From Fimbriosthenelais zetlandica (lineage: Eukaryota), in NCBI GenBank assembly GCA_977030845.1, contig OZ365112.1, positions 22,878,001 to 22,942,000 on the forward strand: a stretch of DNA of 64,000 nt, read 5' to 3'. The position numbers and the translations under genes were made by a program. Positions 10,542 to 63,379 of this stretch are shown here, one piece after another. Under the pieces are notes generated by a model. The model had not been told where the DNA came from. It ran no database searches and worked only from the letters and a program-made list of their open reading frames with translations. Numbering within the stretch: the first letter of the stretch is position 1; every line of letters begins with the position of its first letter.

Positions 10542-11320
10542 TAAGTAAGTGACGGACCTATTAGGCAGGTCCCACATTGTTCTCATCATGAGGTCAAAGT
10601 AACAGTCATCATTGATGGTGACACTGACACCAGAATAATAATCATGGAACTCCTCCCGCGTCACCACCCCATCTGGACGCGTGGGGTCGTCAAAGTGGTG
10701 CAGGAAGACCTGGAGAACCTGCTCCAGGCTCTTACGACCTTTAATGTAGTCAGGATGCTGCATGGCATTCTTCTTGTACGTCACTGAAATGAAAATATAT
10801 TATTTAGTTCTACATTTAATGTAAAGCAACATAATCCTGAAGGGTGGCATATACTATGAACCTCATGAATATGGAAATGTTAATGTAGAATCTCAAAGAT
10901 CATAAGTTTAACTCTATTCTGACAGGTAGAACCAATTATGAATATTGTTAAATGTATAGACCTACCATTGAGGTCCTCAATTTGGAGCTTGCCATCATGG
11001 TTGTGATCTAATTTATCAAATGCCTCATCGATGACACGTTTTCTGGCCTCTGAGAGTGGTGGTTTTAACGCGTCTACAAACTCCCTGAAATCAATAGTCC
11101 CACTGTTGTCTTTGTCGAAAGCTTGGAAGACTCTCTTCAAATCGCCCTTGGGAATCTGAATGCCATATTTCTCAAATCCTACCCTGAATTCATCAAATTG
11201 AATCCCGTGGGAGAAATCTTTGTCGAAGTTCCTGAAAACCGAGGATAGGCCGAGAATGCCTCGGATACCTTTCTTCATGCACGAGTCCCTGATGTAAGCG
11301 AGGATTTTACGGGTATCCAT
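10539..11320 (-). CDS. Calcyphosin-family EF-hand calcium-binding protein, 199 aa, 2 coding exons
   Basis: Exons 11320-10966 and 10783-10539 join in phase 1 (600 nt). EF-hand loops: DKDFSHGIQFDEF, DKDNSGTIDFREF, DHNHDGKLQIEDL. The calcyphosin-type C-terminal motif is HP..IKG...FD....DGVVTREEFHDYYSGVS..I.DD.YF.LMM..W. An in-frame TGA lies upstream of ATG 11320; an acceptor at 11518 implies upstream 5'UTR exon(s). Confidence 0.88.
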
Positions 11321-14300
11321 GGCTATGGTTTCTCCTCTCAATGATGTTCAGTTCACATTGGAGCTCAAACAAAGCGGCGGTTTGCTCCTTTGTTGGTTGG
11401 ATTGATTGAGTGGGCTGGGCCTTACACAGGATACAATATGTAACGAGGTTTGTTCTCGGGTCACTACAGGTGTGTTTCTGGTTGCTGCTCTCTTTGTGTC
11501 CACGTTAACATATAGAATCTGAAATAAGAGACGAGTAACCCATTAACAATGAAATGATGGATGGACCCTTTCAGTGTAATCTAGGGGCGGGTCTGACCCA
11601 AGGGACGGGGTCGTATGGTGTGGTGGTGCGGGGGTCGGGGTGAGTGGAGGGAGTTCTCCATTTAACCTCACAAGCTTTCGGATCTGTCCTTGGCTTTAAT
11701 GCCTGATATGCTTAGAATATTACAGAGTTCAATATCAACCTCGGTAAACCTTATTATATATAAGCATTTAGATCAATGCTTGATAGAGCCTGCTTATAAA
11801 TTAAAGAGTACTAAGGCGCTAAACAAAACATTTTTGGGGGCCTAATGTTGCATAAAATCTGCTCCTCGGGCATTCTTACTGGATCGCTCAAACTGATCAG
11901 TGCATTAAGATTAAGTAGGTGATACAGGCACCTTGACATTTTTTGTGTAGTACTGCGGCATCTCAACAATAACATTTTACCAGAATCTTCCTGGTTAAAT
12001 TTGCTAGGTATCTTCAATTGGTGCAGACATAGAGGGTCATTATGCCCTCATTGATATAATTCCCTCTGGATCCTTACCTCTGCATGCCAATCTCTAATTC
12101 ACTATTATTTAACACTCCCATAGTCTCTGATACCAGACTGAATACCATTGTATGTGTGTATACATTATGCAGCAGTACTTGTACAGTACTACACTTCAGT
12201 GACAAGGGGTCTATAGAATCAACACAGCATACCTCAATGATGTTGGTAGCCTTGAGTACATCAGAAAGCGGAGCTGCTCCGTGAGTCACTCAGCATAAAC
12301 AAACTACCCTTCAATCTTCTTCCTGGTTGAAGAAAGGTGGGAGGACGGTAGTGAGTGAAGTTTCTCAGGCTCAACAAGTCTCTAAATCCAACATCAATTA
12401 ATATTATTTGTTTACGGGAACTGAACAACTCCCCTCACAATTTCTGGCAGATATTTGCTTCTGGAATGTTTAGGAACTTGAGGGAAAGCCCACACGACTA
12501 TCTCATTAAATATTTAGTCCAGAAATCAATTGGACATTGAAAAGGGTGAAGCTTTATGCTATGGTGAAATATCTGTTTCCAATTGTCAGGTTTGAGTTGG
12601 TCCAAGACTGATTATGTGATATATGTTCTCTTATAAGAGCAGTGAAGTCTGGCCCAGGTCAGACCCGTTTGACCACTCCATGACCTGTGAGCTGTAACAG
12701 TGGATCTACCCTACTTTAAACCCTACTTTGAACAGACTATTCTACTTACTGACAAGACTTAGGGCATATAGTGCAAAATAGTGGCCTTTAGTTGTACTGC
12801 TTACTCGTTCTCTAAAAGATTATCTGGCAGCTGAACTGATCAATCCCAATGATACGAAGCCAGTGGTATCGATTAACCTTTAAATATTTGTGTCACAAGT
12901 GATATTTGTATGCAACTTGCCAATATTGGGACATTCTAGTCCAGTTCACCATGTTCAGTGTCCCCTTGTAAGTGTGCGCTGACTGGGGAAATGTTGCAAG
13001 ATTAAAAGAAAAAACTGAATATTATGTTTATAAAGTATAGACAAACCTGTTGATATATGAGATGCCGCGCTATGGTATTAGCCTACTTTATGGTTGTCTA
13101 TTTGTATGGTGAAGTGGTTGATGCCTGGATGGAACTGGTGGATGTTTTATAGGGCTCTGGTAGGGCTATATGGGCTATAATCCTTTGTTATGTTTGTCAT
13201 ACAGGTGTGATCGTTGTCAGGGATCTCTAGCAGACAGATGTGTGATCCAGATGTGATATCTCCCAGATCTGAGCTCAAAATCCAGAGTTGTGTAATTTCT
13301 TAGTTTTCTGAAAATCCTGGTGTGGAAATGAATGATATCAGGGCTTGATCTCTGGTGCTGATTGATTTCTCACAGACTGATTGTCAAGAGTATTTTTTTA
13401 AATCAAAATCTCACATTTAGGGATCTCAGAAGCTATGATATGAGTAGAATATCAAAATGAAGTTTGAACTTTTGGAAGTATGTAGCGGGCGTGTGTTCAC
13501 AGTGTGAGGGTTGGGTAGATGATGCAGCCTGCCAGCTCCAGCCTTGGTCTTTGTAATACTGATACCTTAATGCTGGCCTCCTCTATCTCACACTCACGAC
13601 GCTGGTGAGGGACTCAGTGCTAGCTTTATGGCGTGCCAAATGTTATATATGTTGTTGATACAATGTGTAGGGATGTTAGGTAACAAATGGGAGGTAACAA
13701 ATCTTCCTGATACATTTGGAAATTGTCCAGGTTTTACGAAGGGGAGCGCATGAAAACATATAGCAGTAGAATATATTATATCCATCCATATCATGCTTTT
13801 GATACATGCAATGATATATGATAATGAAATGAATGAATTAACCACACCAGTTGATCCCAGTATCCATGGATATCGTCACGCCACTCTAGTTTTTAGCTGT
13901 AATTATTGCATTGTTGTAGCAACCCGTGAATGAGTTTGCAGAATTAGGGGAAATTTTACAGTATTTGGGAGGCAAACATCCCGAAACTTTGTTTTCGGAG
14001 GTTAGAAGTAATGTTTGGATCTCAACCCCATGTGAAATTGCCAGGCCTCTAACTCGGTCCTAAGAGAAAAAAGTTTTCTCTTTTAAGCTTTCAGCTTTAG
14101 CTGATAAGAGCTAAAGGGACTATCTGTGTTTTTGGAATGAAATTTACAACTAACAATCTGTGGGGGCATCTTTACCCCTCAAACAGTTTAAAAATCATCT
14201 GCTCTAAAAGGCACCGAGTGGCGGAGCAATGTGTTACACACTATCTTACCACTTAATATCCAGCTAGGTGAGTGTGAGTGTGGTCCTACTTTACTCTCAC

Positions 14301-20039: not shown

Positions 20040-21407
20040 TCAGTTGGCGACAAGGAGATGCTGCAAGCTGGGGTAGTTAGCCAGATTGTTCTGATTCATA
20101 CTGTCAATAAAGTTTTTATGAGACAGACTAGACTCTGGTGAAGGTAGGTTCTGGTTGAGACCAGGGGCGGAGGTTGAACCAGCAGACATCCCCCCACTGC
20201 GAGGACTTCCAGCTCCAGGGAACATCTCCTGGAGACCAGGCATGTTGTTTGAATGGCCACCATAGGAAGGCGAGGGGGTGAAAGGTCCCAACATGGATCC
20301 ATACAGATCTGTCATCGATCCATAGATGGGTGAGGCTAATCCTGACGGTAGAGTCCCATGGAGGTTACCTTGTGCTGCTGCTTGTTGCTGCATCATGAAG
20401 TAATGTTGCAACCTGTTTGGACTGCCTTCCAGAGCCATTGGATGGATCGGGCCTGGTGCCCTGACAGGAGACCTTGGACTCAGGGTGCGCGGCCTCTGGG
20501 CCATACCTTGGTTTTGAGTATGGAGTCCACTTGCTGCTGCCCCGAATGGGTTCTGAGGCATCGGTGGTGGACAACTGGGCCCGGATGGTAATCCATGTGG
20601 TGGAGATCTCTGCTTGATGTAAGCACCAAGCTCTGTTGGAGAAAGCCTGGATGGTCTCTTAGCTTGGGTCTTCAGTTTGGTAGAACCGAACTTGGTCTGG
20701 GCGAACATGGCTGTTGTCATTGTGTTGTTCTGTTGGTTGCGGTTAAGGAAGGAAGCAATGGGAGCAGCATTGGTTGTTCCTGAAGAACCTGTGCTCCCTG
20801 ATGGTGAGGTTGAACCATTATAGCTCCTTGCTGGAGCAATAGGTGACACGGAACCTGTCCCCCATGGACTGGTGGCACCTGAAGCCACTGGTGCAGTTGG
20901 TGTCGGAGTGGGTGATGTTGTAGCAGGAGAAACACTGAGGTTAGAGAGGGAGGAGGAGAGAGAATCAATGGGTTTGAAGCACTGAGCATCTGGGTTGAAG
21001 CCTTTAGAGGCTGTTGCTATTTCTTTGTCCACTCCCTGGAATGATTCGCGGTCTCCACGTGAAGAATAGAGCACTTTGACGATGCCCTTCTCACCGATCC
21101 TGTATGAGACCTCGCCGGGGTCGATCCAGAGGGTCAGGTCCTTGGGGAGGTACTCCTTTATTTCCTCAATTTCCAGGCGACTCAGTCTGGCTGCCAGTTC
21201 CATGAGAGGCTCCACCTTCTCCGTGGATACACGGATACACCTGTAGGCTGAACCTTTGTATGGCTTGTCATCGTACCAATGTCCTTCAAATTTACTCTTA
21301 ATGCCCTTCTCCAACTCCTCACCAAACATGTCAACGCGCCTGCGCGGTAACTTATTGTACAAGTAGGAGATGACAAAGTTCAAAGCCACAGACACTTCAA
21401 CGTGCAT
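20040..21407 (-). CDS. TOB: Tob protein (BTG/Tob antiproliferative family, CCR4-NOT deadenylase adaptor), 455 aa, single coding exon
   Basis: BTG domain with box A (GHWYDDKPYKGSAYRCI) and box B (LPKDLTLWIDPGEVSYRIGE). Also a PAM2 motif (KGFNPDAQCFKPI), the Tob motif TTAMFAQTKFGSTKLK and the Tob-type C-terminus LQHLLVAN. Confidence 0.96.
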   Translation of the reverse strand: MHVEVSVALNFVISYLYNKLPRRRVDMFGEELEKGIKSKFEGHWYDDKPYKGSAYRCIRVSTEKVEPLMELAARLSRLEIEEIKEYLPKDLTLWIDPGEVSYRIGEKGIVKVLYSSRGDRESFQGVDKEIATASKGFNPDAQCFKPIDSLSSSLSNLSVSPATTSPTPTPTAPVASGATSPWGTGSVSPIAPARSYNGSTSPSGSTGSSGTTNAAPIASFLNRNQQNNTMTTAMFAQTKFGSTKLKTQAKRPSRLSPTELGAYIKQRSPPHGLPSGPSCPPPMPQNPFGAAASGLHTQNQGMAQRPRTLSPRSPVRAPGPIHPMALEGSPNRLQHYFMMQQQAAAQGNLHGTLPSGLASPIYGSMTDLYGSMLGPFTPSPSYGGHSNNMPGLQEMFPGAGSPRSGGMSAGSTSAPGLNQNLPSPESSLSHKNFIDSMNQNNLANYPSLQHLLVAN

Positions 21408-32430: not shown

Positions 32431-34434
32431 TCTAATCGCCTCCCTCAAAAGATCGCCTCCTTCTCTTTGTACCGCTGTCCTGTGAACGCCTTAAAAAATA
32501 GAAGCGTTCTATGATTATATTTGATGCCCACGCATCCACTTCATATACTCACAGGTTATAGCTGCTTTGATACCTGCAAGAGAAATCAATCATGGAAACC
32601 GTGATGTTTCTTTTTGTTTTATTCACTGCATGTACAATGAGCTGCTTCGGATGTGCGTCTATATGCATACATGTACATTGATGCATATGATACAATGTAC
32701 AATGATGTACATTGTTTCTAAATATTTTTTATCATCAATATGTTTCATATCAATAATATTATTGTTTTTTGTGACCTTTAGACAGTAAAATGTTATTGGA
32801 GGCTCAGTCGTAAGTCATATTTGGTTTTGCATATAGACATAGAGTAAATTTATGACAACCCACGCATTAATTCTTGTTTTCACCACTGAATGAATGAGCA
32901 GCAACTGCAGCAGCCGTTGCAGCAGCAGCAGGTAGCAGCAGTAGTAAACGAGCAGTAGCTGCAGATTTGGCTTCTCAAATATAAACACCCAGGAACCCAT
33001 TTACAGAGAGAAACCAGGGGGTTACTCTTCTAAGGCCCAAGGGAAATTAGCCATAGATTTATTTGTAATGCGTATACTTTCACTCTCATACATCTGTTTA
33101 ATCACTGTGAACAATTCATATTATATGCAGTCTTAAAGTTTAATCTAACAGAGGCCTATCTTAAGGGAAATTCTCATTTTTCTAAAAACAAAATGATTCA
33201 TGTAGAATGTACGTATTCATGCTTGGGAGGCATCATATGTTAAAGCTTTGCCAGCCTACCCTGTCTCAATAAGTAATCAAGTGTCCCCCACATTCCCCAT
33301 ATACACCCAGGGGCAGGATGAGGGGCGGGGGCGGGATGGATTAGCATTAGGGCATTAGGATAAGGAGTGGGCGGCTATCATAATAGGAATCGTGGGTGTT
33401 GAGAAAGGCATTTATTATCGGTTTTTTTTTTACTATTTATACCTTGTTTGGTAAGAGATCCCTGTAAAAGTGGCCTATCAGGGATCGAACTGTTTTATTG
33501 TGGTACTATGATTATGCAGTGTAATTGTATATAGTAGGCAAACTCAATTTCCTTTAGATAGAAATTGCGCATTACAAGGTTGGTTGGATGTCATGTTCCA
33601 TTCTTGTACTCGTAGACAAATAGTTAGCTCCAGTCCTCTCCATCTGGTGAGTTTACCTGAATGGATTTTAGTTAGTGAATGTCCCACTAGGTAGCAGCTA
33701 AGAGCCAATAATTAGTCCAGTTGGGAATTCATTTTAATAACATGGAGCTTTTAATCATCTCGTGTATTAAATGACTAATTAATATTATTTTATTGGCGTT
33801 TGAACGAACAATTTACTGTGCACCTACATCATTATAATTATTTGAATTTGAAGGTGCATGTACTTTAATATTGATCTAAATGCATTGTGATTAATCATTT
33901 TTGCTCGGATTAACTATTGTTCCCGTATGGCCATGGATCAAAATTTCTCTTCTCAAGGAGACTTGTGAGCCAACTGGATTTGGAAGTGAAGAGGTATGTA
34001 CAGTCACGCTTTCAGGCGCGTAAAATGGTATTAAACAATCGTGCTCCTGTGAACACGCATGTTGATCAACTTAGTGTGAGGCAATAATACATTGGTTTAC
34101 TATATTAGTGAGTTTATGTGAGGAGAACATACATTTATGTTCCCTACATTTAAGTTTAACACGAATTACACTGACAACAACGAGTGATCAAACCCAAGGA
34201 CTGGGGATCTAATAAATAGATCCAAAAGCATGTGTACATGAGTCTACTATGACAGGTTCATAACTTTTCTTTCAGGCTAATGAAAAATTGGCAAACAGCC
34301 CTGGATCAATGGAGTGGGAAAGGGATAGAATGAACACCTCGGATCAGATCTACCAGCCCTCTCCTTCTTGGAGGCAATGCAATCTAAACAGTGACCTGGG
34401 TGCGAGAAGGTACGACTATACCTGGTGAATCAAA

Positions 34435-37385
34435 ATGTTGAAAGAAACGGATAAAACAGAAGATCAAGTTAATGAAAATCAAACTGTGTGTGTTTGGAAG
34501 ATGGATCAGTGCAATGCAGTTTCAGTCAGAAGATCTGGATCCAAGAGATTCCCTTCTGTGTCCCTCTCAGAATTCATTCTGCTGAGAGACTTGTCTCTAA
34601 GGATCGGACCCAAATGGAAAGATTTAGCAGCAGGACTTGGTTTCAAATCTAACGATGTAGATTTATTAATGAAGTCAAACCCTATGTCTAAAGGATCAGA
34701 ACTAGCATACAGGACTCTATCCATCTGGTGGAGGAAACGCGACTCAACGGATGTCAAACCAGTCCTCCAAAAAGTGTTCAGAGATAATAAATTCATGGCT
34801 GCTGAAGGTAAGGTTTAAATTTTTAGTGATTGGTTGAAATCAATGTCAGAGTTTTTATATATGCCATTATAGCTTCCACTCGGTGCTGTAGAATGTTTTT
34901 AATCCAGGATAGAATATAATCCTTACTTAGTATACAGTGTGTTAATCTTCCCCTCTTATAAACACTGGCATCGAGCCAGCAAGAGGCGTTTAGCTATTTT
35001 TTTGGTAATTGTTTCATATTTTGTATTGTCCTATATTTTATATCAGTAACTGCCTCACACCTGACAAGTAGTGCACCTCAGAAGCTATAGATTAAAGTTA
35101 CATAGGGAGCAACAGCCTATAAGTTGGAGCTAATACCTGACTATTAATTGATTCTTAGCTCTGTGGGGGTACATTGAGTGGCTTTAAATCGTATCAAGCC
35201 TAAACAGGACTCTCATTTTGTGCATATTGTTTTCAATTCGTCTATTATACACGAACGTGAATTAATGACCATACGCGAAAATTGAGAGCACATCTAGCTT
35301 ATAGTGGCCTGCAGTTGTTGACCAGTGCAGTAGCTAGATATAAGGAATACCTTATCTCTTTTAGACATAATACGTAGAATACTTTATTCCAGCACTGCTG
35401 ATGAATCGTCATCAGTTAAAGCCTCCAGCTATACCTTCTGATTCTGTCACATTGACCTCATCTTCATCTCATCCAACTGACAACAGAACAGAGAGGGTGA
35501 TGGCAAGAATCACCCCAAAACATAACCTCCAAAGGTACCTGACCTCTTCTGGACGACCCAAGACATCTGTGGTGAGAACTAAGGCAATTGGTGGAGAGGG
35601 TGAGTGACGTTCTGAAGTTCTGATCCCTGCAACATACGTTTTTTAGTATTAGAAACAGATTTACATAACAAAACCTTTACTTTGTAACATTAGAACATGA
35701 AGATTAACCTTTTCTTGACCCATTGGAATTGTGGAGTAACAACTCTCCAACTCTCCATTCCTCAAGGCAAACACACACAAGTCTTTCTTGCAGCATGGAA
35801 ATCTAAAAAGTGTCGTTCTGTCTTCTATTACTTGTTATTGTATTCATTTCTGAATTTGTACAATGGATTTGCCTTCTGATTTCCCAGGTTGTAGGTTGGT
35901 GTTATCCAACACACCTGATGCTCTGGCGTCAACAGATAACGCTGTCAGTCATCGACCTTCTGGAGTGACAGCTGGGGAGACTGTCAAACTCTCTGTTACC
36001 AATACATCTCTCAGACGACCCAAGACAACTACTGCTGTCAAGTTATCATCAGAGGTCATGCAGCAAGACAAGCCTGAGACAGGTGGGTATAGGCCAGACT
36101 GAAGGATTTTTTCACTTTTCTGAAATGAGGGTCCAGTATTCCCTGGGACCAATTTTAAGACATGAATGGGTGCATATATGGGTGAATCCGTATATTTCCC
36201 ATCCTTTTTCCAGAGTTGTCAATCCATCTGTCAGTGGTGGGTCTTGAGTGTGAGGACCCTAGACGAGCAATACTCCGGTTTTACACCACAGTACTGAGGG
36301 ATGAAGATCGTCACATCAGAATCCTCTCTCACCATTCAGCCTTTAGGGCTGTCACTGTCAAACGCTTCACACTAGATTCCTTTGCCATGCATGTCACCTG
36401 CAGGAACATGACATCCCTGTCTGATCTGGAAATACTACACAGCACACATCAACTGGATGCTATCCTGTCTGAGGTGCTGGCTTCACCAGAGGTGCTGGCG
36501 GAAGTTGGGGTGAAGGCACTCCACCTTGCTGCTCTACTCAACAGAGAAGAAGTGGAGGCTTTCAGGAAGAATCTGAGATGTGCAGAAGACTCGAAACCGG
36601 ACAACAAATCTGCCTCAATATTGCCTGAAAGAAACAAAGGTAGATATACTTTCAGCTCCAAAGAGGGAGCCTGCTCTGTCTAATTTAATTTGTCCTGCTG
36701 TTCAACACTGAAGCTTTCTTATCTCCTTGTTTATAGGCCTACATGTATCAATTATAAGATGAAAAACACTGATATATTTGTTTGTAATTGAGAGAAATTT
36801 ATATAAATTAATCATATTTTCTACACGGGTGATATCGCTTTTTCAGCATGGAGCAATGGTGAAAAGAGATCATGGACACTGGAGGACATTGGCCAAAAGT
36901 TGAGGATGGAGATCACTGCCCTCAGCAGCCGCTATCGTGTGTTCCAACGGGAGATGGCTGATTTCTTAATGGCCATAAAAATGAGTAACTGCTCTGATGG
37001 CGAGAAGATTACATGTTTGAATGACATCATACATGCATATACCTCCTTGAGAAACAGTCCCAGCATTGGGAAGAACGTGAGAACAGATTTAGTCAGGGAA
37101 TACCTCTCTATAGTCAATCTCGTTCGCATCATGTGTGACGGGATTCAGCGTGGTTTGATGTTTCACAACGAGTCTTCTCGTGTTTTTCAAATCTCGTCTA
37201 AGATTTCCAGTATTGAATCAATGATGGAGCCCGCATATAATTTCAGTGATGGGTATCTTGAAGTCGAGTTAGGATTAATATCTCCCCATCAGAAAGACTT
37301 CCGTGGACTTCTTTCATTTGTCCCAGGACTGTTGAAAAGGTTCAATGATTTTTGTGACTATATTAAAGATTCTAACGAAGAATGA
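34435..37385 (+). CDS. Death-domain + TRADD-N-like domain + unknown helical domain protein, about 579 aa, 5 coding exons (N-terminus uncertain)
   Basis: Exons 34435-34807, 35393-35599, 35888-36082, 36214-36639 and 36847-37385 are joined by phase-1 GT-AG introns (1740 nt). Death-domain signature: LRDLSLRIGPKWKDLAAGLGFKSNDVD...AYRTLSIWW. Exon 4 resembles the TRADD-N-like consensus. Confidence 0.78.
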
Positions 37386-46400: not shown

Positions 46401-48128
46401 CCACCTCACTTACAAGTACCTAACTCCTGTGAGTAGTCTTATCTAAACTCTACTTTCCCTCATAGAAGTAATTCATATCTTCAGCCAAATATTCTGCAAT
46501 TGTTTGTTCGATAATTGATGATTGCCTTTGTTCTGTTCACTTTGATATACCTGTTGTCTTGTCTTCAGTATCTCTATGACTTCATGGAAGCTGTGATCAC
46601 CAGGCAGACGTCACCAGAAGAGGCGTACCGTAAGCTGGATGAGATGGCCTCCAAACAGACAGAAACTTTACGTAAATTAACCAAACAGGTACAGGAGGCC
46701 CGGGAAAACCACGACGATGACACGGTGAAGAGAGTGGTCACCGAGTATGATGAGGCACTGGAGAGGTACACTTTAACTCACTCATTTACAGGCTTTTCAA
46801 GATTTAAAAATAGCCCTTTTAAGGATTTATTTCCCTTCAAAGAAGGGCAAATTAAGATTGAACGAAAAAAAGGAAAATTCCTTATATATCGTAATTTCTT
46901 TGGTCATATTTCACCTTTGTTTTATAGGTACATTCCGGTACTCATGCAGCAAGCTAAGATCTACTGGGATCTTGAGAACTATGCTCAGGTGGAGAAAATC
47001 TTCCGCAAATCCGTGGAGTTCTGTAATGAACATGACGTGTGGAAACTCAATGTGGCGCACGTTCTCTTCATGCAGGAGAACAAGTTCAAGGAAGCCACAG
47101 GTTTCTATGAGCCCATAGTCAAGAAACATTATGACAATGTATGTATAGTAACTTTCCACATATTTTATCAATTTTTGTTCACTAATTTACTCATACTATT
47201 TTGTGTACATTGCATTAATATTTTTGGTTCTATTAATTTCCCCATAGTTTTATTTATCATAATTTGTATCTGTTCTTTCAGATCCTGAGCGTCAGCGCCA
47301 TCGTCCTTGCTAATCTCTGTGTATCCTACATCATGACTAGTCAAAACGAAGAGGTACTTGAATTTATTTGAATGATACTCCCTTATACTCATTATCCAAT
47401 TGCAAAACTTAAGCTTTTTTTTTCTTGCCCTATATCATCTCCGGTTATAAAATCCTGAGAAACATTAAGGGATATACTTTTATATCTTAGGCAGAAGAAT
47501 TGATGAGGAAAATAGAAAAAGAGGAGGAACAGGTGGCCTATGACGATCCGGACAAGAAGATCTACCATTTATGTATAGTTAATCTTGTGATAGGGTAAGT
47601 TATCATACGTTGTGCCATACAATATAATCAATTTTTAAAAAGTCATTGATTAAGTCGTTTTCTGTATCCCAACAATCATTGAGATCCCTTTTCCTCTTTC
47701 AGAACCTTGTACTGTGCCAAGGGTAACTATGAGTTTGGCATATCTCGTGTCATCAAGTCTCTGGAGCCGTACCAGAAGAAGCTGGGTACTGACACCTGGT
47801 TCTACGCCAAGCGTAACTTCTTATCTCTCATAGAAAACATGGCTAAACACATGATCATGTTACGTGACTCCGTCCTCCAGGAGTGCATACAGTTCCTGGA
47901 ACACTGCGAACGTGAGTACCGCTACTTATTTCATATCAATGCTACATAATAATTTTGAAATTTATGCTAAGATTAAACTTTTTTTTATCTCATTTTGCTA
48001 TAGTGTATGGACGAGATGAAAAGGCTGTCGTAGAACAACCACTAGAAGAGGAGCTCATTCACCCCGGCAAGAACACTGTCACTTACGAGGCACGTCTGCT
48101 GAAGTCTCTACTTCAAGAACTGGTTTAA
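43420..48128 (+). CDS. TTC30: Tetratricopeptide repeat protein 30 / IFT70 (fleer/DYF-1), IFT-B subunit, 647 aa, 14 exons
   Basis: Exons: 43420-43473, 43883-43948, 44062-44271, 44396-44521, 44605-44776, 44938-45066, 46039-46241, 46363-46428, 46569-46765, 46928-47138, 47282-47353, 47491-47594, 47703-47911, 48004-48128 (1944 nt, in phase). Hallmarks: SRAALSLLGYCYY, GIREHPELSVG, ALTDMPPRAEEELDAVTLHNQAL, LYCAKGNYEFGISRVIKSLEPY, KNTVTYEARLLK. Confidence 0.96.
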
Positions 48129-53153: not shown

Positions 53154-56100
53154 ATGATTCCTGCAGCTATAGCAAGGAAGTACGAAAAAGGTAGACATAT
53201 TTATTCATGAATATATATGTTTGAATATGATTATTTCCTTGATCATATTACATTTTCACATAGTATTATTTTTTATGGGATTTTATACTGGTATTTTAAA
53301 TACATAGGTAACATTTTAAATGTGTATTACTTTGTGTATATATTTTATATTGAATGACACTTATGGCTGTTTGTAGGCCTGCTGCTCAGCAGCTGTAGCT
53401 TGGCGTCTGGACATGGAGTCACTCACTTACTAACTCTAACACCAGCTCCTACCCTCCCCCCACCCACTCTCCTTCACTCTCTACCCCCTCCCTCTACACC
53501 CACCCCTCTCTCTCATCCGCTGCCCACACAGAGTAATATTAGCGTACTCGCCTATTGATCTGTATTGATCCCTTACTTATAAACCTTTGTACTTGACTCT
53601 GTCCGCTTTGTTAGCCGCTTGTATATGTCCCAGATAAAATAACATTGAAATGACAGTGTATTACATCATTCAAAATTGAAACTGAAATAGGATTTAGACA
53701 GTTGTCATAGTTTTGATATCGAGCAGAAGGCCAGCAACTCTATAAGTAACTTTAGTAAACTATATAATCAGAATGAATTATAATTTTAAGAATGTGTATA
53801 AATACTATAACCCTACTAATTGACTAACATTGGCTGAAATGAGATATTTAGTGTTAGAGTGACCATTATCACCTGCATGGTTGTAATATTAGAGCTAGCC
53901 TACTACACCTCTCTACCACACCCAATACGGGCGTGGCTAGCGCTGGTATATATACGGACGCTCTTTAAAAACACCGGGGCGCTTATCAGTTTGACACTAC
54001 CTTTATTCCCCTGGCTTATAATATAGACGTCATATCTTATTTATTTGATAGAATTTGATCCCTATAGGTTTCAACGAAGAAAAAAATATGCATTTAGATA
54101 GTATTTGGTTTAATTTGATAGCATATCGTCAGGTCAAGATGTTGCTGGTTTAGTGACTGTTACAAATAAGACCAAATATTGAATCAGGACACAATCTGTG
54201 ACAAAGATAATTAAATCTCTCTCCCTCCACCTCCTTCCCCCTACACCTCCCGACACGCGCGTCAAGGTAACAGCTGGCAGTTTATGTATGTAGTGGGGCG
54301 CTTTATACACCTAAGTTGGTACTCTACACTGGAGGTTAAAAAAAGAAAGAAAAAAAAGAGGTTAACAAACCCACTGTGTTTCTGAGACTGGGTCATTGTT
54401 CATATCACTGAGAGAGACATGACATACTACACTGCAGCAAGCCATGTACATTCACGTTGCCCTTGGCACTTTAATCCCTGCTAAGTGATCCTGCACCGAG
54501 TATAGGTTATCCCTGTGTGTAAAATGTTACTCAGTTCTTTAGCATCTCTGGACTGGATCGTGTATTGTTAGTCCCTTTATGTCATGTGACAGTTAACTAT
54601 CATTGTCCGGTCCTGATGCTTACAAGATAAATGTAACTTGTATCCAATGCTATAACAATTTATCAGATTCCCTACACTAACTTTCAATGGTATTTTCTCT
54701 CTTAGTATGTCCAACGAGTTGGTATGTCCCATGTTTTGACCATCAATTTCCTATAATCACTTATTTTGGCATTGTATTTGGCCTTATGGAGTTAATATTT
54801 TTATGCAATTAGTTGGCTCTGTATGACTGGCTTTTGTTACTGATACGGTTTTCTAATGTAAGGAATCATAAGCTGTTTGGTAGGGCCTACGTGGCTCCGC
54901 GTGCACTCCACTTACCAAAGTTTGGCACTTCTAAAGAAAGGATTTTACTTTTTTCATTTGAAAACTTGTTACATTTACACGTTGTGGATCATACCAGAAA
55001 CCTTTGGATATTTTAACTTTTAAAACGCAATGGGATAATAATGAATAGGTTAACCTTCGCAGCCTCACAGTCACTAGTAAAGATTTTACTTCTACGAATA
55101 GGCACTGCTAAGTGAATCTCCAAAATCACACGTTTTGAATGATCTCAGATCTTTTTTCAGCAGAATATGATACAAATAACTTATTTTTCTCATATGATCC
55201 TAGACATGTGACAAGCAAACGTGTAACACTACACCAGGGAGAACGTAAACTGATATACACACAGCAGTTTTAGCCATGACATTATTTCACTTTGAACTGG
55301 GAGAGATAATAAATAATGGATTGAAATCTCTATAATATATTATGTCCTGCTTTTCTCATGGATTTGAAAAGCAAAACTAGGGAATGTAATTGAGATCTTA
55401 AAATTCCCAGAACGCAAAGGAAACTGAAAGAGGAAATAAGGGAATGATGTCAGTTAATAACCAATGAAACAGTAGTTTCTACAATGGAGGAATGGAAAAA
55501 AGTTTGTAATGTGACCTGCAAAGTATGGAGTTTGGGATGTGGTTTTGGTGAAAAACAATGAATGTTTGAAAAGGAAGAAAACCAAGGGAACACACAAGGC
55601 TCTTGTTTATGCTTGGTACAGTGCTGGAGAGAGAAATTCGGAGTGTTCTCTATATACACTGTTTCTTTTTGGTGGTCGACAAAGAATGGCTCTGCTACAG
55701 GACCATTGTCTGTGCATGAAGGAAACGGGCCAGACCGATGGTACTCCAAAGTTTTCAAATTTTGTATATGTTCTCTTGGGGATCAAAAATATTCATTCTG
55801 TGCAAGAGGATTTGTAACTTTTCTTGCACAACATTTGGCATGGTATTCACTTTTCTCTCTTTAAATGGTAAAATACACATTTTTGATGATTTTCACCAAT
55901 TTTAAACATTGTACTTTCTTTCTTGTCACCAGGGGAAGTCAGTTATGAGGAGCGTGAAAAGATGAGGCTGTCAATGCGGGCCAACATCCATGACCTTCAC
56001 CGGGCTGTTCAGCTGGGGCGCTCTGACTGGGTCCAAGACATCCTCAACCAGGACAACGTCAATATCAATGGCACCGTCTGTGGTACAACAGCCCTCTCTC

Positions 56101-56891
56101 TGGCCCTCTACAAGGAGCGTGACCCCATTTTTGAACTCTTCCTGTGCCATAAATGCTCATCTAGTCGTCTGGATCTGAACAAACTGAGTAAAGATGATAA
56201 GCAGAGGATCGAGCCCCCTCTCATCACAGCTTGTAGACTGGGTAACAAGCGAGCAGTCAAACTCTTACTCAAGTTCCGAGCTTATGTGGACTCGACTGAT
56301 AACTTCCAGCATACTGCCCTCTGGATGGCCACCCTCCAGAGGTACACTGACCTGGTCAAGCTCCTCCTCTGTCACGGTGCTTCTGTGAACCCCTCTCACT
56401 TATGGACTCATTCTCCACTGTTTTTCGCGGTCAAGTACTCGAGTAGGAGAACTGGTATAGCTAAACTGCTCATATACCAGGGAGCGGATGTGACCATCAA
56501 GAGTACTCTGTCTCTTCTTTACTGTGCCATCATTCAGGGTGATCAGAGCATGGCACGTCTCATAGTAGAAGCTGGGTATAATGTCTCAAAGGACCAACGT
56601 ATCAGATCAGAGTGGCAGTCAGGTGCTTTAACACGCAGTGAAGACTTGATGTACTGGCTAGGTGTGGAACTGTCAACCCCAGTCAGTCTTCAGAGACAGT
56701 GTAGATCAACAGTTAGGACAACCATAGCCAAAGTTCACAAAGGAAGGTACTTCTTAGACAAACTTAGAGAACTGCCACTACCAAAGAGTATCCTTAACTA
56801 TTTAGCCTTGAGTGAAAATGCATGGGAAGAAGGGTCCACAGTTTCACCCCCCTTAATAAATGTTCAAGAACCAATATTGGGTGATAATTAA
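53154..56891 (+). CDS. Ankyrin repeat and SOCS box protein (ASB-like), about 331 aa
   Basis: The main exon 55933-56891 encodes about 6 ankyrin repeats (TALSLAL, EPPLITACRLG, TALWMAT, SPLFFAV, SLLYCAI) and a SOCS box (PVSLQRQCRSTVR...LRELPLPKSILNYL). The only phase-compatible start found is exon 53154-53190 (MIPAAIARKYEK-G); that part is less certain. Confidence 0.85.
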
Positions 56892-61335: not shown

Positions 61336-63379
61336 TCAGTCACTTTCCTGTGTGTGAGTATGTCGGGTAAAGTATGGCAGTTCGTGTAGACGAGCTTCAT
61401 AATGTCTGTACCACTTCTCACCATCCAGTATCCTCCCTCTCAACTCATCATACCAGGTGCCGGGCGGCAGGTAGATATCTCTATACACTGCTCCCTTCTC
61501 TAACACAGGAGCCACGAGTACATCATCCCCCAACATGAACTGGTCATCTATGACCTGAGCTTCTTCATCACAAGGTGCCACCCACCACAGAGGTCTGATA
61601 ATGGGGGCTCCAGTCTCCACTGATTCATTAGCCAGTCTGATGATGGTCTCAGCATACTTCTCATGTAACTGAGTCATTCTCTTACAAATGTTCAACACCT
61701 CTTCATCATACTGCCAGGGGGAGATGGAGAACTGAAGGGCAGGCAGAAAGACATTGGCCTGAAGCCATCGAACAAAGAGTTCAGGATCTGGAAGTCCTGA
61801 TGAGGATCCAATCATGCCTGAACTACCATAAGCATTGCCTCCTATCATATCAGGCAGTATAAAGGGGTAGCCAAGGATGCTGAATGTGAGGGCGTGTGGG
61901 ATGAGAGATTTCAGCCCATTGTTGTAGCCCCATTTTGATTCTTTATCCATCATTCTCACGAAGATGGGCAGGTGTTGGGTCTGTAGCCCTACCCTTACTT
62001 CTAATGCCCTGTTGTCCTTGTCACATTCGTAGCACATCTCAGCATATTTGGTTGTATAAACATTGGGATTCTTCCAGCAATTCTCAGGCCGAGCCATCGG
62101 TGGCAGCCAGTTCACCTCCCCAGCATCAAATTTAAATGAAGCTAGTTTGTATTTCTCCTTGATATTTATAAGTTCATTCTTGAACCATTCCACGGCTGAG
62201 GGTTTGGTGACGTCCAGTATCTTACCTATTCCATCCCACCAGATGGTATGACCGGGTAAGGCGCCTGACTTGATCCAGTGTGGTTGTGAAGAGGCCTTGG
62301 ACATAGGGCTACAGAAAGGATGTACCCAGAGTGTAGCCCTGAACCCAAGCTCTCTCAATGTCTCCATCATTGCCTCAGGCTGAGGGAACTTTTTACGATC
62401 AAAATGCATGTCACCATAATGGGTCGTCCAGTCATCATCTATCTCTATCTGAAATCAATAGGATAATGCAATATAAAGGACTATTCCAATTTAATGGAAA
62501 ATACAAAATGGGGGACAATTCATAGAGATTACTAAGGCAGAAAATGTGTGTATATTACAACAAATTGTTTGGTTAGGAATAGTTTGTGTAATTCACCTGT
62601 GCAGCCTTGAATCCGTGGTCCTTTATCTCCTTGGCATAAGCCAGCACCGACTCCTGGGTGATGCCTTTCTTGTACCTGGCCCAGGTGGACCATATTGGAT
62701 GTGTAAATATGGCCTCGTCGGGTATGGCTGTGGGTGGTGAGAACACCTGCCTGGTGGCCAGCTGATGAGTCTTAACCACATCATAACTGATAAACACCTG
62801 ATAGCTCATCTTCACACTCTCATTCTCCACATTGTGATAGGGTGAGTTCCACTTTGAGATGAGGGAGAGAGTTTGATCTTTCTTATGGTTCATAGTGATG
62901 AAGAGAGGCACTTGCTGGGAGACGTAGAGAGAGAAACCACTGGATGAGAGCCAGTAGCGTTCCTGTACCCCTCCATATTGGTCCTTGAATGAATCTCCAG
63001 CCACAAAAGCCATCTCAGCCCGGGACCATTTCTCAATGGGCCAGAGTTGATGCCTGATTTGAGCCGCCCCATACCAATGTGATCCAGCCATGGGGAATGT
63101 ATCAACAAGTGTCTTGATGGTGGCGACAGGGAGCCAGTCTACCCTGTATTCTATACCAGTGTCATGTTTGATGTAAGTAAAGCACACCTCTCCCAGCCCC
63201 GGCCATGAGAGAGTGAGAGATTTAAAGTCCTCACCGCGGCTTACTTTAGGCTGGATCTCTGGTATCAGACCTCGACCAAGGACTGCCGACTGCACTTCTT
63301 TATGGTGCTCATTAGCAAATGATACTAACAGAGATTTACCCTGGATTTCTAAATGAAGGGTGTGGAAATCAATCTCCAT
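61336..63379 (-). CDS. MYORG: MYORG-like glycoside hydrolase family 31 protein, at least 631 aa, 2 coding exons in window (N-terminus may extend upstream)
   Basis: Exons 63379-62597 and 62448-61336 splice in phase. Motifs: PIWSTWARYK, IEIDDDW, FDRKKFP, WVHPF, nucleophile FKFDAGE, acid/base LPDMIGGNAY, PIIRPLWW and DDQFMLGDDVLVAPV. The symbol is a family-level call. Confidence 0.9.

What the first reader, a model, noticed from the sequence alone, without database searches (positions are those of the whole stretch)
34435..37385. Death domain + TRADD-N-like domain + unknown helical C-terminal domain: candidate novel immune/apoptosis adaptor
Seen: exon 1 encodes a Death domain. Exon 4 (36214-36639) reads LDSFAMHVTCRNMTSLSDLEILHSTHQLDAILSEVLASPEVLAEVGVKALHLAALLNREEVEAF, fitting the recalled TRADD-N-like/DEDD C-terminal pattern GS..FHV.C....L..L...Y.SG.L...L...L...E.L...G...V.L...I.EEEY. 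Exon 5 encodes about 180 helical residues I do not recognise. All introns are phase 1, consistent with exon shuffling. Established: Death plus TRADD-N-like domains mark immune/conflict signalling shared by animals and some bacteria. Inference: TRADD itself has TRADD-N first and Death last, so this reversed order with an extra effector-like domain may be an undescribed adaptor.
Basis: partly seen in the sequence, partly recalled or inferred. Interest (0 to 1): 0.7.

Follow-up and report, generated by a model that had tools for sequence, protein, structure and literature searches.

The report
Death, TRADD-like and SPACA9-like adaptor gene
This is a real five-exon animal gene whose protein joins a death domain and a diverged TRADD-type domain to a domain folded like SPACA9, a protein that lines the inside of cilia microtubules; I found that combination described nowhere, and its function is untested.

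Summary
A five-exon gene on the + strand (34435-37385) has GT-AG introns that are all phase 1 and encodes 579 aa. The exon 1 donor is at 34808, so exon 1 ends at 34807.

Exon 1 is a death domain. The window copy scores just under Pfam's cut-off. A profile of the family hits almost only solved death domains (RIPK1, TNFR1, FADD; best E 8.8e-6).

Exon 4 is a diverged TRADD-like N domain. It gets no Pfam hit. Profile-profile comparison with this genome's own PF20694 exons gives 95% probability. The confident AlphaFold model best matches a PF20694 cluster (TM 0.74).

Exon 5, the "unknown helical domain", has the eight-helix fold of SPACA9, a microtubule inner protein. SPACA9 scores Z 17.1 (rmsd 2.2 Å, 148 of 156 residues); the next unrelated fold scores 9.5. 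SPACA9 is also the top sequence-profile hit in the PDB (E 0.005).

The gene is single-copy here. The whole layout recurs in bivalves and most of it in annelids, all unnamed.

Death followed by TRADD-N is not new: Kaur et al. 2021 list such architectures. The SPACA9-like C-terminus is not mentioned there or in any paper I found.

The function is inferred, and no RNA data could be obtained. I rate it a new variant of a known kind.

The parts
34435..34807 (+). Exon 1: start codon (in-frame stop just upstream at 34426-34428) and the death domain (about residues 43-124). Donor GT at 34808, phase 1.
   Evidence: Pfam Death E 6e-4, 20.3 bits, cut-off 22.6. Aligned bivalve counterparts score 23.8-39 bits. 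The family profile A5 hits RIPK1, TNFR1, FADD, Fas, CRADD and TRADD death domains in the PDB, best E 8.8e-6. Dreissena has a phase-1 intron at the same place.
35393..35599 (+). Exon 2: Ser/Thr/Pro/Arg-rich linker with a GRPKTS motif. No fold predicted.
   Evidence: AG/GT borders, phase 1. No Pfam hit. Aligns with low-complexity linkers of the bivalve proteins.
35888..36082 (+). Exon 3: second linker exon with an RRPKTT motif.
   Evidence: Counterpart in L003 at 39% identity, E 3.6e-6. The motif stretch is found again in L013 and in the Paralvinella protein P0187.
36214..36639 (+). Exon 4: diverged TRADD-like N domain (beta-alpha-beta-beta-alpha-beta sandwich, residues 2-125 of the exon translation) plus a short linker. 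Ser55 sits in the beta2-beta3 turn and Cys62 is invariant in the family.
   Evidence: AlphaFold2 pLDDT 88.8. Atlas structure search: best match is a PF20694 cluster, TM 0.74/0.69, rmsd 2.7. hhalign against this genome's PF20694 exons: probability 95.2%, E 2.7e-8. Atlas features 0.94. Family column counts.
36847..37385 (+). Exon 5: SPACA9-like eight-helix domain (residues 11-177 of the exon translation) and the stop codon (37383-37385).
   Evidence: AlphaFold2 pLDDT 87.3, pTM 0.85. Foldseek PDB: the first 22 rows are all SPACA9 chains, probability 1.0, then a gap. VIA-align: Z 17.1 and 13.7 for SPACA9, next 9.5. The A3 profile's top PDB sequence hit is SPACA9, E 0.0046, end to end. 44 relatives found in the 1.84-billion-protein library.

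Best explanation
Shown: a real, single-copy gene encodes a 579-aa cytoplasmic protein. Its parts, in order, are an N-terminal death domain, a roughly 135-residue Ser/Thr/Pro/Arg-rich linker, a diverged TRADD-like N domain and a C-terminal domain with the SPACA9 fold. The last three parts are one exon or two exons each, separated by phase-1 introns. The same layout is kept in bivalve molluscs, and most of it in annelids. The family is therefore old within Lophotrochozoa, not a recent shuffle.

Inferred: the protein works as a signalling adaptor. The death domain would dock it by death-domain to death-domain contact onto a receptor or adaptor complex. The TRADD-like N domain would bridge to a partner, as TRADD's N domain does for the MATH domain of TRAF2. 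The SPACA9-like domain would present a conserved binding face. The family's most conserved motif (S-x-S-V-G-x-x-V-R-T-D-L-V-R-E-Y) lies where SPACA9 touches tubulin, but with different residues. The partner may therefore not be tubulin.
For: Gene model and phase-1 introns. Single copy in the 447-Mb genome. Death domain. TRADD-like N: (2 of 15 family members hit PF20694, best E 0.004). SPACA9-like fold. The fold is described as eight helices and unique among human proteins in PMC9564825. Conserved layout: full-length bivalve proteins from Ylistrum, Mya, Mactra, Dreissena, Magallana, Mercenaria and Pinctada. The Dreissena gene has the same domain-per-exon plan and phase-1 introns. A 619-aa uninterrupted frame sits on a 2.1-kb transcript-like contig. 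An annelid protein (Paralvinella, P0187) aligns over linker, middle and C-terminal domains, E 1.7e-25. The adaptor logic of Death-like plus TRADD-N proteins is from Kaur et al. 2021.
Against: No transcript evidence exists for this species. Neither Pfam PF20694 nor PF15120 reaches threshold on the window protein. Solved TRADD-N (1f2h) scores only Z 5.0, no better than generic ferredoxin-like folds. In the HMM alignment to SPACA9, six of the seven published tubulin or SAXO contact residues are not kept. No binding partner is known. The gene is single-copy with a constant C-terminus, unlike the expanded, variable immune families of Kaur et al.
Confidence: 0.7

Rival explanations
1. Exon 4 encodes only a generic ferredoxin/RRM-like alpha+beta sandwich, and its likeness to TRADD-N is convergent or due to fold commonness.
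For: No Pfam hit at E<=1 for the window copy. A PF20694 scan of the whole genome finds seven other places but not this exon. Foldseek PDB gives nothing significant. HMG-CoA reductase (Z 7.8) outranks TRADD-N 1f2h (Z 5.0).
Against: hhalign gives probability 95.2% and E 2.7e-8 over 76 columns against bona fide PF20694 exons. The best Atlas structural match by a wide margin is a PF20694 cluster (0.74, against 0.48 for the first unrelated fold). Ten of the ten best feature hits that carry a Pfam family share that family or clan. Two family members hit PF20694 on their own. The Ser in the beta2-beta3 turn and the Cys ending beta3 match the family motif.
Confidence: 0.12
2. Exon 5 encodes an ordinary four-helix bundle or coiled-coil with no evolutionary tie to SPACA9. 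The match would reflect the limited ways in which helices can pack.
For: About 10-12% identity. Pfam SPACA9 is hit by only 1 of 38 family members, at E 0.042. Tubulin-contact residues are not conserved. Kaur et al. labelled a possibly related Lingula C-terminus simply 'Coiled-coil'.
Against: Z 17.1 over 148 of 156 residues at rmsd 2.2 Å, with the next non-SPACA9 fold at 9.5. Foldseek lists 22 SPACA9 chains at probability 1.0 before any other protein. The sequence profile independently ranks SPACA9 first in the PDB with a co-linear end-to-end alignment. Six of the nine best PDB hits are SPACA9 sequences. Shared motifs are (K/R)-Y-x-x-F in the first helix, an aromatic residue at Y117, and G-x-x-x-x-x-P in the last helix. 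The fold has eight helices, as described for SPACA9.
Confidence: 0.15
3. The exons are not one gene in this species: a mis-joined model, a pseudogene, or two neighbouring genes (death domain gene plus TRADD-like/SPACA9-like gene).
For: No RNA run could be listed. Some relatives' models lack the death domain (P0008, P0029, P0187).
Against: The frame is intact with canonical splice sites and matching phases. The same order sits in one frame in seven bivalve proteins and on a transcript-like contig. The Dreissena gene shares the intron at the end of the death-domain exon.
Confidence: 0.05

Closest known systems
'Death+TRADDN-DEDD2+Coiled-coil' proteins of Lingula anatina (XP_013395730.1, 468 aa; XP_013413759.1, 590 aa) in Kaur et al. 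2021, Fig. 4 source data 1
   Same: Same order of death domain then TRADD-N then a helical C-terminus, similar length, and a lophotrochozoan host.
   Different: I could not fetch these sequences, so orthology is untested. Neither appeared among the 44 relatives of exon 5. Their C-terminus is labelled only as coiled-coil, not SPACA9-like.
Unnamed bivalve 'Death domain-containing' proteins (Dreissena XP_052262253, Mya WAQ97003.1, Magallana A0A8W8K4A6, Ylistrum XP_060063338, Mactra KAL4241118.1)
   Same: Alignable over all three domains, with the same exon plan in Dreissena. These are the family to which the window gene belongs.
   Different: Only 17-30% identity to the window protein. None has a described function or an annotated TRADD-like or SPACA9-like domain. 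Heterodont members have lost the turn serine.
TRADD (vertebrate TNFR1-associated death domain protein)
   Same: Combines a TRADD-N type domain with a death domain, and serves as an adaptor.
   Different: The order is reversed (TRADD-N first, Death last). TRADD has no third domain. The structural match of exon 4 to solved TRADD-N is weak (Z 5.0).
DEDD/DEDD2 and the invertebrate Death-like + TRADD-N expansions (Kaur et al. 2021)
   Same: N-terminal death-fold domain followed by a TRADD-like N domain of the PF20694 type, and found in marine invertebrates.
   Different: Those mostly use DED or CARD, occur as large lineage-specific expansions and have variable C-termini. This gene is single-copy with a conserved C-terminus.
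SPACA9 (C9orf9), lumenal microtubule inner protein of cilia and sperm flagella
   Same: Same eight-helix fold end to end, with a weak but top-ranked sequence-profile match.
   Different: SPACA9 is a stand-alone protein of about 170-220 aa. Here the fold is the C-terminal domain of a 579-aa death-domain protein. Most tubulin and SAXO contact residues differ, and Pfam PF15120 is not reached.

Membership tests
Death domain (Pfam PF00531) | Sequence match to the Death profile at or above the curated cut-off (22.6 bits) | tested here: inconclusive
   The window copy scores 20.3 bits, E 6e-4. Aligned family members score 23.8, 26.7 and 39 bits.
Death domain (Pfam PF00531) | A family profile recognises solved death domains specifically | tested here: met
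   Profile A5 hits RIPK1, THOC1, TNFR1, ankyrin, FADD, Fas, CRADD and TRADD death domains. Best E is 8.8e-6, with almost no other hits.
Death domain (Pfam PF00531) | Six-helix bundle fold | not tested
TRADD-like N domain (Pfam PF20694) | Match to the Pfam model at or above 23.7 bits | tested here: not met
   No hit at E<=1 for exon 4. The exon is not among the 7 genome-wide PF20694 hits. Two of 15 family members hit below threshold, best E 0.004; P0029 hit at E 0.03 when scanned whole.
TRADD-like N domain (Pfam PF20694) | Profile-level homology to bona fide members | tested here: met
   hhalign of A2 against A4 (own-genome PF20694 exons, three of them over the cut-off): probability 95.2%, E 2.7e-8, 76 columns.
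TRADD-like N domain (Pfam PF20694) | RRM-like two-layer alpha+beta sandwich with a four-stranded antiparallel sheet and two kinked helices (Kaur et al. 2021) | tested here: met
   The model has strands 2-8, 46-52, 57-62 and 103-108 and broken helices 15-28/30-38 and 65-76/79-88/91-97, pLDDT 88.8. It matches a PF20694 cluster model at TM 0.74. The match to solved TRADD-N itself is only Z 5.0.
TRADD-like N domain (Pfam PF20694) | 'uS' motif (tiny residue + Ser) in the beta2-beta3 turn | tested here: inconclusive
   The window has D-S in the turn: Ser is present but the preceding residue is not tiny. Across the family the Ser column holds Ser in 6, Gly in 7 and Thr in 1 of 14 sequences.
TRADD proper | TRADD-N at the N-terminus and the death domain at the C-terminus | tested here: not met
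   The order is Death, then TRADD-like N, then a third domain.
Expanded Death-like + TRADD-N immune families (Kaur et al. 2021) | Lineage-specific expansion with variable C-terminal regions | tested here: not met
   Exons 4 and 5 each match only themselves in the genome at E<=0.01. The C-terminal domain is conserved from annelids to bivalves.
SPACA9 (Pfam PF15120) | Match to the Pfam model at or above 25 bits | tested here: not met
   No hit on exon 5. One of 38 family members hits at E 0.042. The genome scan gives only an 18-bit hit elsewhere.
SPACA9 (Pfam PF15120) | Eight-helix fold: a four-helix bundle capped by two pairs of short helices | tested here: met
   Eight helices in the model. 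Z 17.1, rmsd 2.2 Å, 148 of 156 residues aligned. Foldseek probability 1.0, TM 0.60-0.78. Fold description in PMC9564825.
SPACA9 (Pfam PF15120) | Conserved tubulin/SAXO contact residues Q20, Q21, H37, T61, R64, Y117, N123 | tested here: not met
   In the HMM alignment only the aromatic residue at Y117 is kept (as Phe). R64 aligns with a conserved Asp. The alignment is low-identity, so this is approximate.
SPACA9 (Pfam PF15120) | Binds the lumenal microtubule lattice | not testable with these tools
   Needs biochemistry or imaging.

The most novel reading that the evidence does not exclude
The SPACA9-like domain still binds tubulin or the microtubule lattice. This family would then couple death-domain signalling directly to microtubules or cilia, for example by sensing lattice damage or by anchoring a death-fold complex on axonemes. 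SPACA9's 'unique' fold would then belong to an older domain family shared between cilia structure and cell-death or immune signalling. An amphioxus death-domain protein also carries the fold.
Probability: 0.12. Interest if true: 0.8.

Novelty: new variant of a known kind. Interest (0 to 1): 0.5.

Why it matters
Death-fold plus TRADD-N proteins are seen as the invertebrate and bacterial face of apoptosis and immune adaptor logic. Almost all catalogued ones belong to fast-changing expansions. This one is a stable, single-copy, three-domain protein kept from annelids to bivalves, which makes it a tractable candidate for a core pathway component.

Its C-terminus gives SPACA9 a first distant relative outside cilia proteins. 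SPACA9's fold was reported as unique among human proteins and known only inside microtubules. This raises a testable link between death-domain signalling and the cytoskeleton. It also shows that current Pfam models miss both domains in this family.

Tried and rejected
- RNA evidence: two searches for sequencing runs listed none.
- Pfam on single exons: nothing for exons 2-5.
- phmmer and profile search of exon 4 against PDB sequences: no TRADD hit.
- Foldseek PDB for exon 4: nothing significant. TRADD-N 1f3v was rank 39, though it had the best TM.
- Atlas search for exon 5, by features and by structure: nothing usable.
- PF15120 scan of the genome: only an 18-bit hit on another contig.
- Word-indexed protein searches with the full-length and middle-domain profiles: only 8 and 10 close relatives, none carrying a TRADD-like annotation.
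- Pfam on other relatives of exon 5: no further partner domains.
- Complex prediction, exon 4 domain against exon 5 domain: no verdict. The score was 0.00 and the partner folded poorly without alignments, so this is no evidence either way (after four busy refusals).
- DNA for P0003 and P0013 could not be fetched.
- A recent exon-shuffling origin in this lineage is rejected, because Dreissena shares the exon plan.

Full report
**The gene.** The exons are 34435-34807, 35393-35599, 35888-36082, 36214-36639 and 36847-37385. Every intron is GT-AG with a pyrimidine-rich acceptor, and every one is phase 1. The only correction is that the exon 1 donor GT sits at 34808, so exon 1 ends at 34807. An in-frame stop lies just upstream of the ATG at 34435. 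Exons 4 and 5 each match only themselves in the 447-Mb assembly at E<=0.01. No public RNA or DNA run holding this stretch could be listed, so splicing here is inferred.

**Host.** The neighbouring TOB/BTG gene (20043-21407, minus strand) has the annelid Paralvinella as its best named relative, followed by molluscs and nemerteans. Earlier notes of this scan also call the genome annelid. I treat it as a lophotrochozoan, probably an annelid.

**Relatives.** An exhaustive HMMER search with exon 5 found 44 proteins.
- The long hits are unnamed or "Death domain-containing" proteins of bivalves: Ylistrum, Mya, Mactra, Dreissena, Magallana, Pinctada and, from a second search, Mercenaria.
- They align with the window protein over the death domain, the low-complexity linker, the middle domain and the C-terminal domain.
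- Two unnamed assemblies hold closer counterparts. L003 matches exons 3, 4 and 5 at 39-54% identity. L004/L013 matches exons 4 and 5 at 42-51% identity, and its exon 4 counterpart is split by an extra intron.
- An annelid protein (Paralvinella KAK2166844.1, P0187) aligns over linker, middle and C-terminal domains at E 1.7e-25.
- The Dreissena gene has the same domain-per-exon plan. It has a phase-1 intron exactly at the end of the death-domain exon and another before the C-terminal exon.
- One bivalve-like relative is a 619-aa uninterrupted frame on a 2.1-kb transcript-like contig.
- The three parts therefore belong together, and the family predates the annelid-mollusc split.

**Exon 1.** Pfam Death scores 20.3 bits, under the 22.6 cut-off. 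Aligned relatives score up to 39 bits. A profile of the N-terminal region hits almost only solved death domains: RIPK1, TNFR1, FADD, Fas, CRADD and TRADD, best E 8.8e-6. The death domain is confirmed.

**Exon 4.**
- *Negative results.* Pfam gives nothing for the window copy. A genome-wide PF20694 scan finds seven other exons but not this one. PDB sequence searches do not find TRADD.
- *Sequence-level support.* Language-model features place the exon with PF20694 clusters at 0.94, sharing 217 of 256 features. Two family members hit PF20694 weakly. hhalign of the family alignment A2 against A4, built from this genome's own PF20694 exons, gives 95.2% probability and E 2.7e-8 over 76 columns.
- *Fold.* AlphaFold2 with A2 gives pLDDT 88.8 and a beta-alpha-beta-beta-alpha-beta sandwich with broken helices. 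This is the topology Kaur et al. describe for TRADD-N.
- *Structure searches.* The best Atlas match is a PF20694 cluster (TM 0.74/0.69, rmsd 2.7 Å). Next comes an SH3/TPR protein at 0.69, then unrelated folds at 0.48 or less. In AlphaFold Swiss-Prot the top hits are the N-terminal regions of SH3TC2 and SH3TC1 (TM 0.60). Against solved structures TRADD-N is unremarkable: Foldseek rank 39, and VIA Z 5.0 among many ferredoxin-like folds.
- *Motif.* The beta2-beta3 turn reads L-D-S-F, so the family's serine is present. Across relatives that column holds Ser in 6, Gly in 7 and Thr in 1 of 14 sequences. The Cys closing beta3 is invariant.
- *Verdict.* Exon 4 is a diverged TRADD-like N domain that current Pfam thresholds miss.

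**Exon 5.**
- *Model.* With 38 relatives (A3), AlphaFold2 gives pLDDT 87.3 and pTM 0.85, with eight helices.
- *Foldseek PDB.* The first 22 rows are all SPACA9 chains from sperm and cilia microtubule structures, at probability 1.0 and TM 0.60-0.78. After them the E-value jumps to 0.19.
- *VIA-align.* An independent all-against-48,161-chains search gives SPACA9 Z 17.1 (rmsd 2.2 Å, 148 of 156 residues) and 13.7. The next fold scores 9.5.
- *Sequence profile.* The A3 profile ranks SPACA9 first among PDB sequences (E 0.0046) with a co-linear end-to-end alignment. Six of the nine best hits are SPACA9 sequences.
- *AlphaFold clusters.* Hits include an oyster family member (TM 0.85), a "C9orf9-like" entry (by my recollection C9orf9 is the old name of SPACA9), and an amphioxus "Death domain-containing protein" of 985 aa with the fold at its N-terminus.
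- *Published context.* Gui et al. 2022 describe the SPACA9 fold as eight helices and unique among human proteins.
- *Limits.* Pfam PF15120 is not reached. In the HMM alignment only one of seven published tubulin or SAXO contact residues is kept. The family's most conserved motif lies at the equivalent spot with different chemistry.
- *Verdict.* I call it a SPACA9-like domain, probably a distant homologue and not an orthologue. Its binding partner is open.

**What is known.** Kaur et al. 2021 describe Death-like plus TRADD-N proteins with varied C-termini in marine invertebrates. Their source data list many "Death+TRADDN" architectures, including "Death+TRADDN-DEDD2+Coiled-coil" in Lingula. SPACA9 is not mentioned in that paper. 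No paper in the library joins SPACA9 with death domains in a relevant way. Unlike the catalogued expansions, this gene is single-copy and its C-terminus is conserved across phyla.

**Mechanism.** This is inferred. The death domain recruits the protein to a death-fold complex. The TRADD-like N domain bridges or switches. The SPACA9-like domain binds a conserved partner. A fold test of contact between the exon 4 and exon 5 domains gave no verdict.

**Scores.** I rate it a new variant of a known kind, with interest 0.5.

Noticed in passing
model of window 36216-36638 (+), against AlphaFold Swiss-Prot and Atlas: The best reviewed-protein structural matches of the TRADD-like N model are the N-terminal regions of human SH3TC2 (53-176) and SH3TC1 (83-209), at TM 0.60. 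An SH3/TPR Atlas cluster matches at TM 0.69. This suggests these Charcot-Marie-Tooth-linked proteins start with an unannotated TRADD-N-like domain. No paper links SH3TC2 with TRADD in that sense.
   Followed up: partly
window 35393-35599 and 35888-36082 (+): Both linker exons end with a similar short motif: S-G-R-P-K-T-S at residue 179 and L-R-R-P-K-T-T at residue 237. It recurs in L003, L013, Paralvinella P0187 and Dreissena (S-R-P-K-T-S). It may be a conserved docking or phosphorylation site, and exons 2 and 3 may be a duplication.
   Followed up: partly
L007-L011 (G000 contigs C11, C1, C19), L005 (C38), L006 (C10): The genome holds a small set of canonical PF20694 TRADD-like N exons. Five are near-identical paralogues with the G-S-I-I-I-E-I-R-C motif. 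One sits in a very long open frame (1494 aa) that may be NCOA6-like.
   Followed up: partly
AlphaFold cluster hit C3XSQ4 (amphioxus, 985 aa): A 'Death domain-containing protein' carries the SPACA9-like fold at its N-terminus (residues 2-171, TM 0.66). Sea cucumber, scallop and annelid proteins also match. The fold may be a recurrent partner of death domains in marine invertebrates.
   Followed up: no
L013 7460-7726 and 8836-8997: In the relative from assembly ERZ25767047, the counterpart of exon 4 is split by an extra intron of about 1.1 kb in the middle of the TRADD-like domain.
   Followed up: no
window 10883-11341 (-), 20043-21407 (-), 46515-47285 (+), 55923-56888 (+), 61339-63379 (-): The neighbours are ordinary animal genes. 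They are an EF-hand exon, an intronless TOB/BTG gene, an ankyrin-repeat SOCS-box gene and a glycoside hydrolase family 31 gene. There is also a TPR-looking exon with no Pfam hit, which I recall as IFT70/TTC30-like. No other death-fold gene is nearby.
   Followed up: partly
L012 (G000 C38:7531590-7531763, minus strand): This is the only trace of a canonical SPACA9 gene in the genome: one 18-bit exon-sized hit with a TAG inside. A true orthologue, if present, is probably split into short exons that the six-frame scan misses.
   Followed up: no
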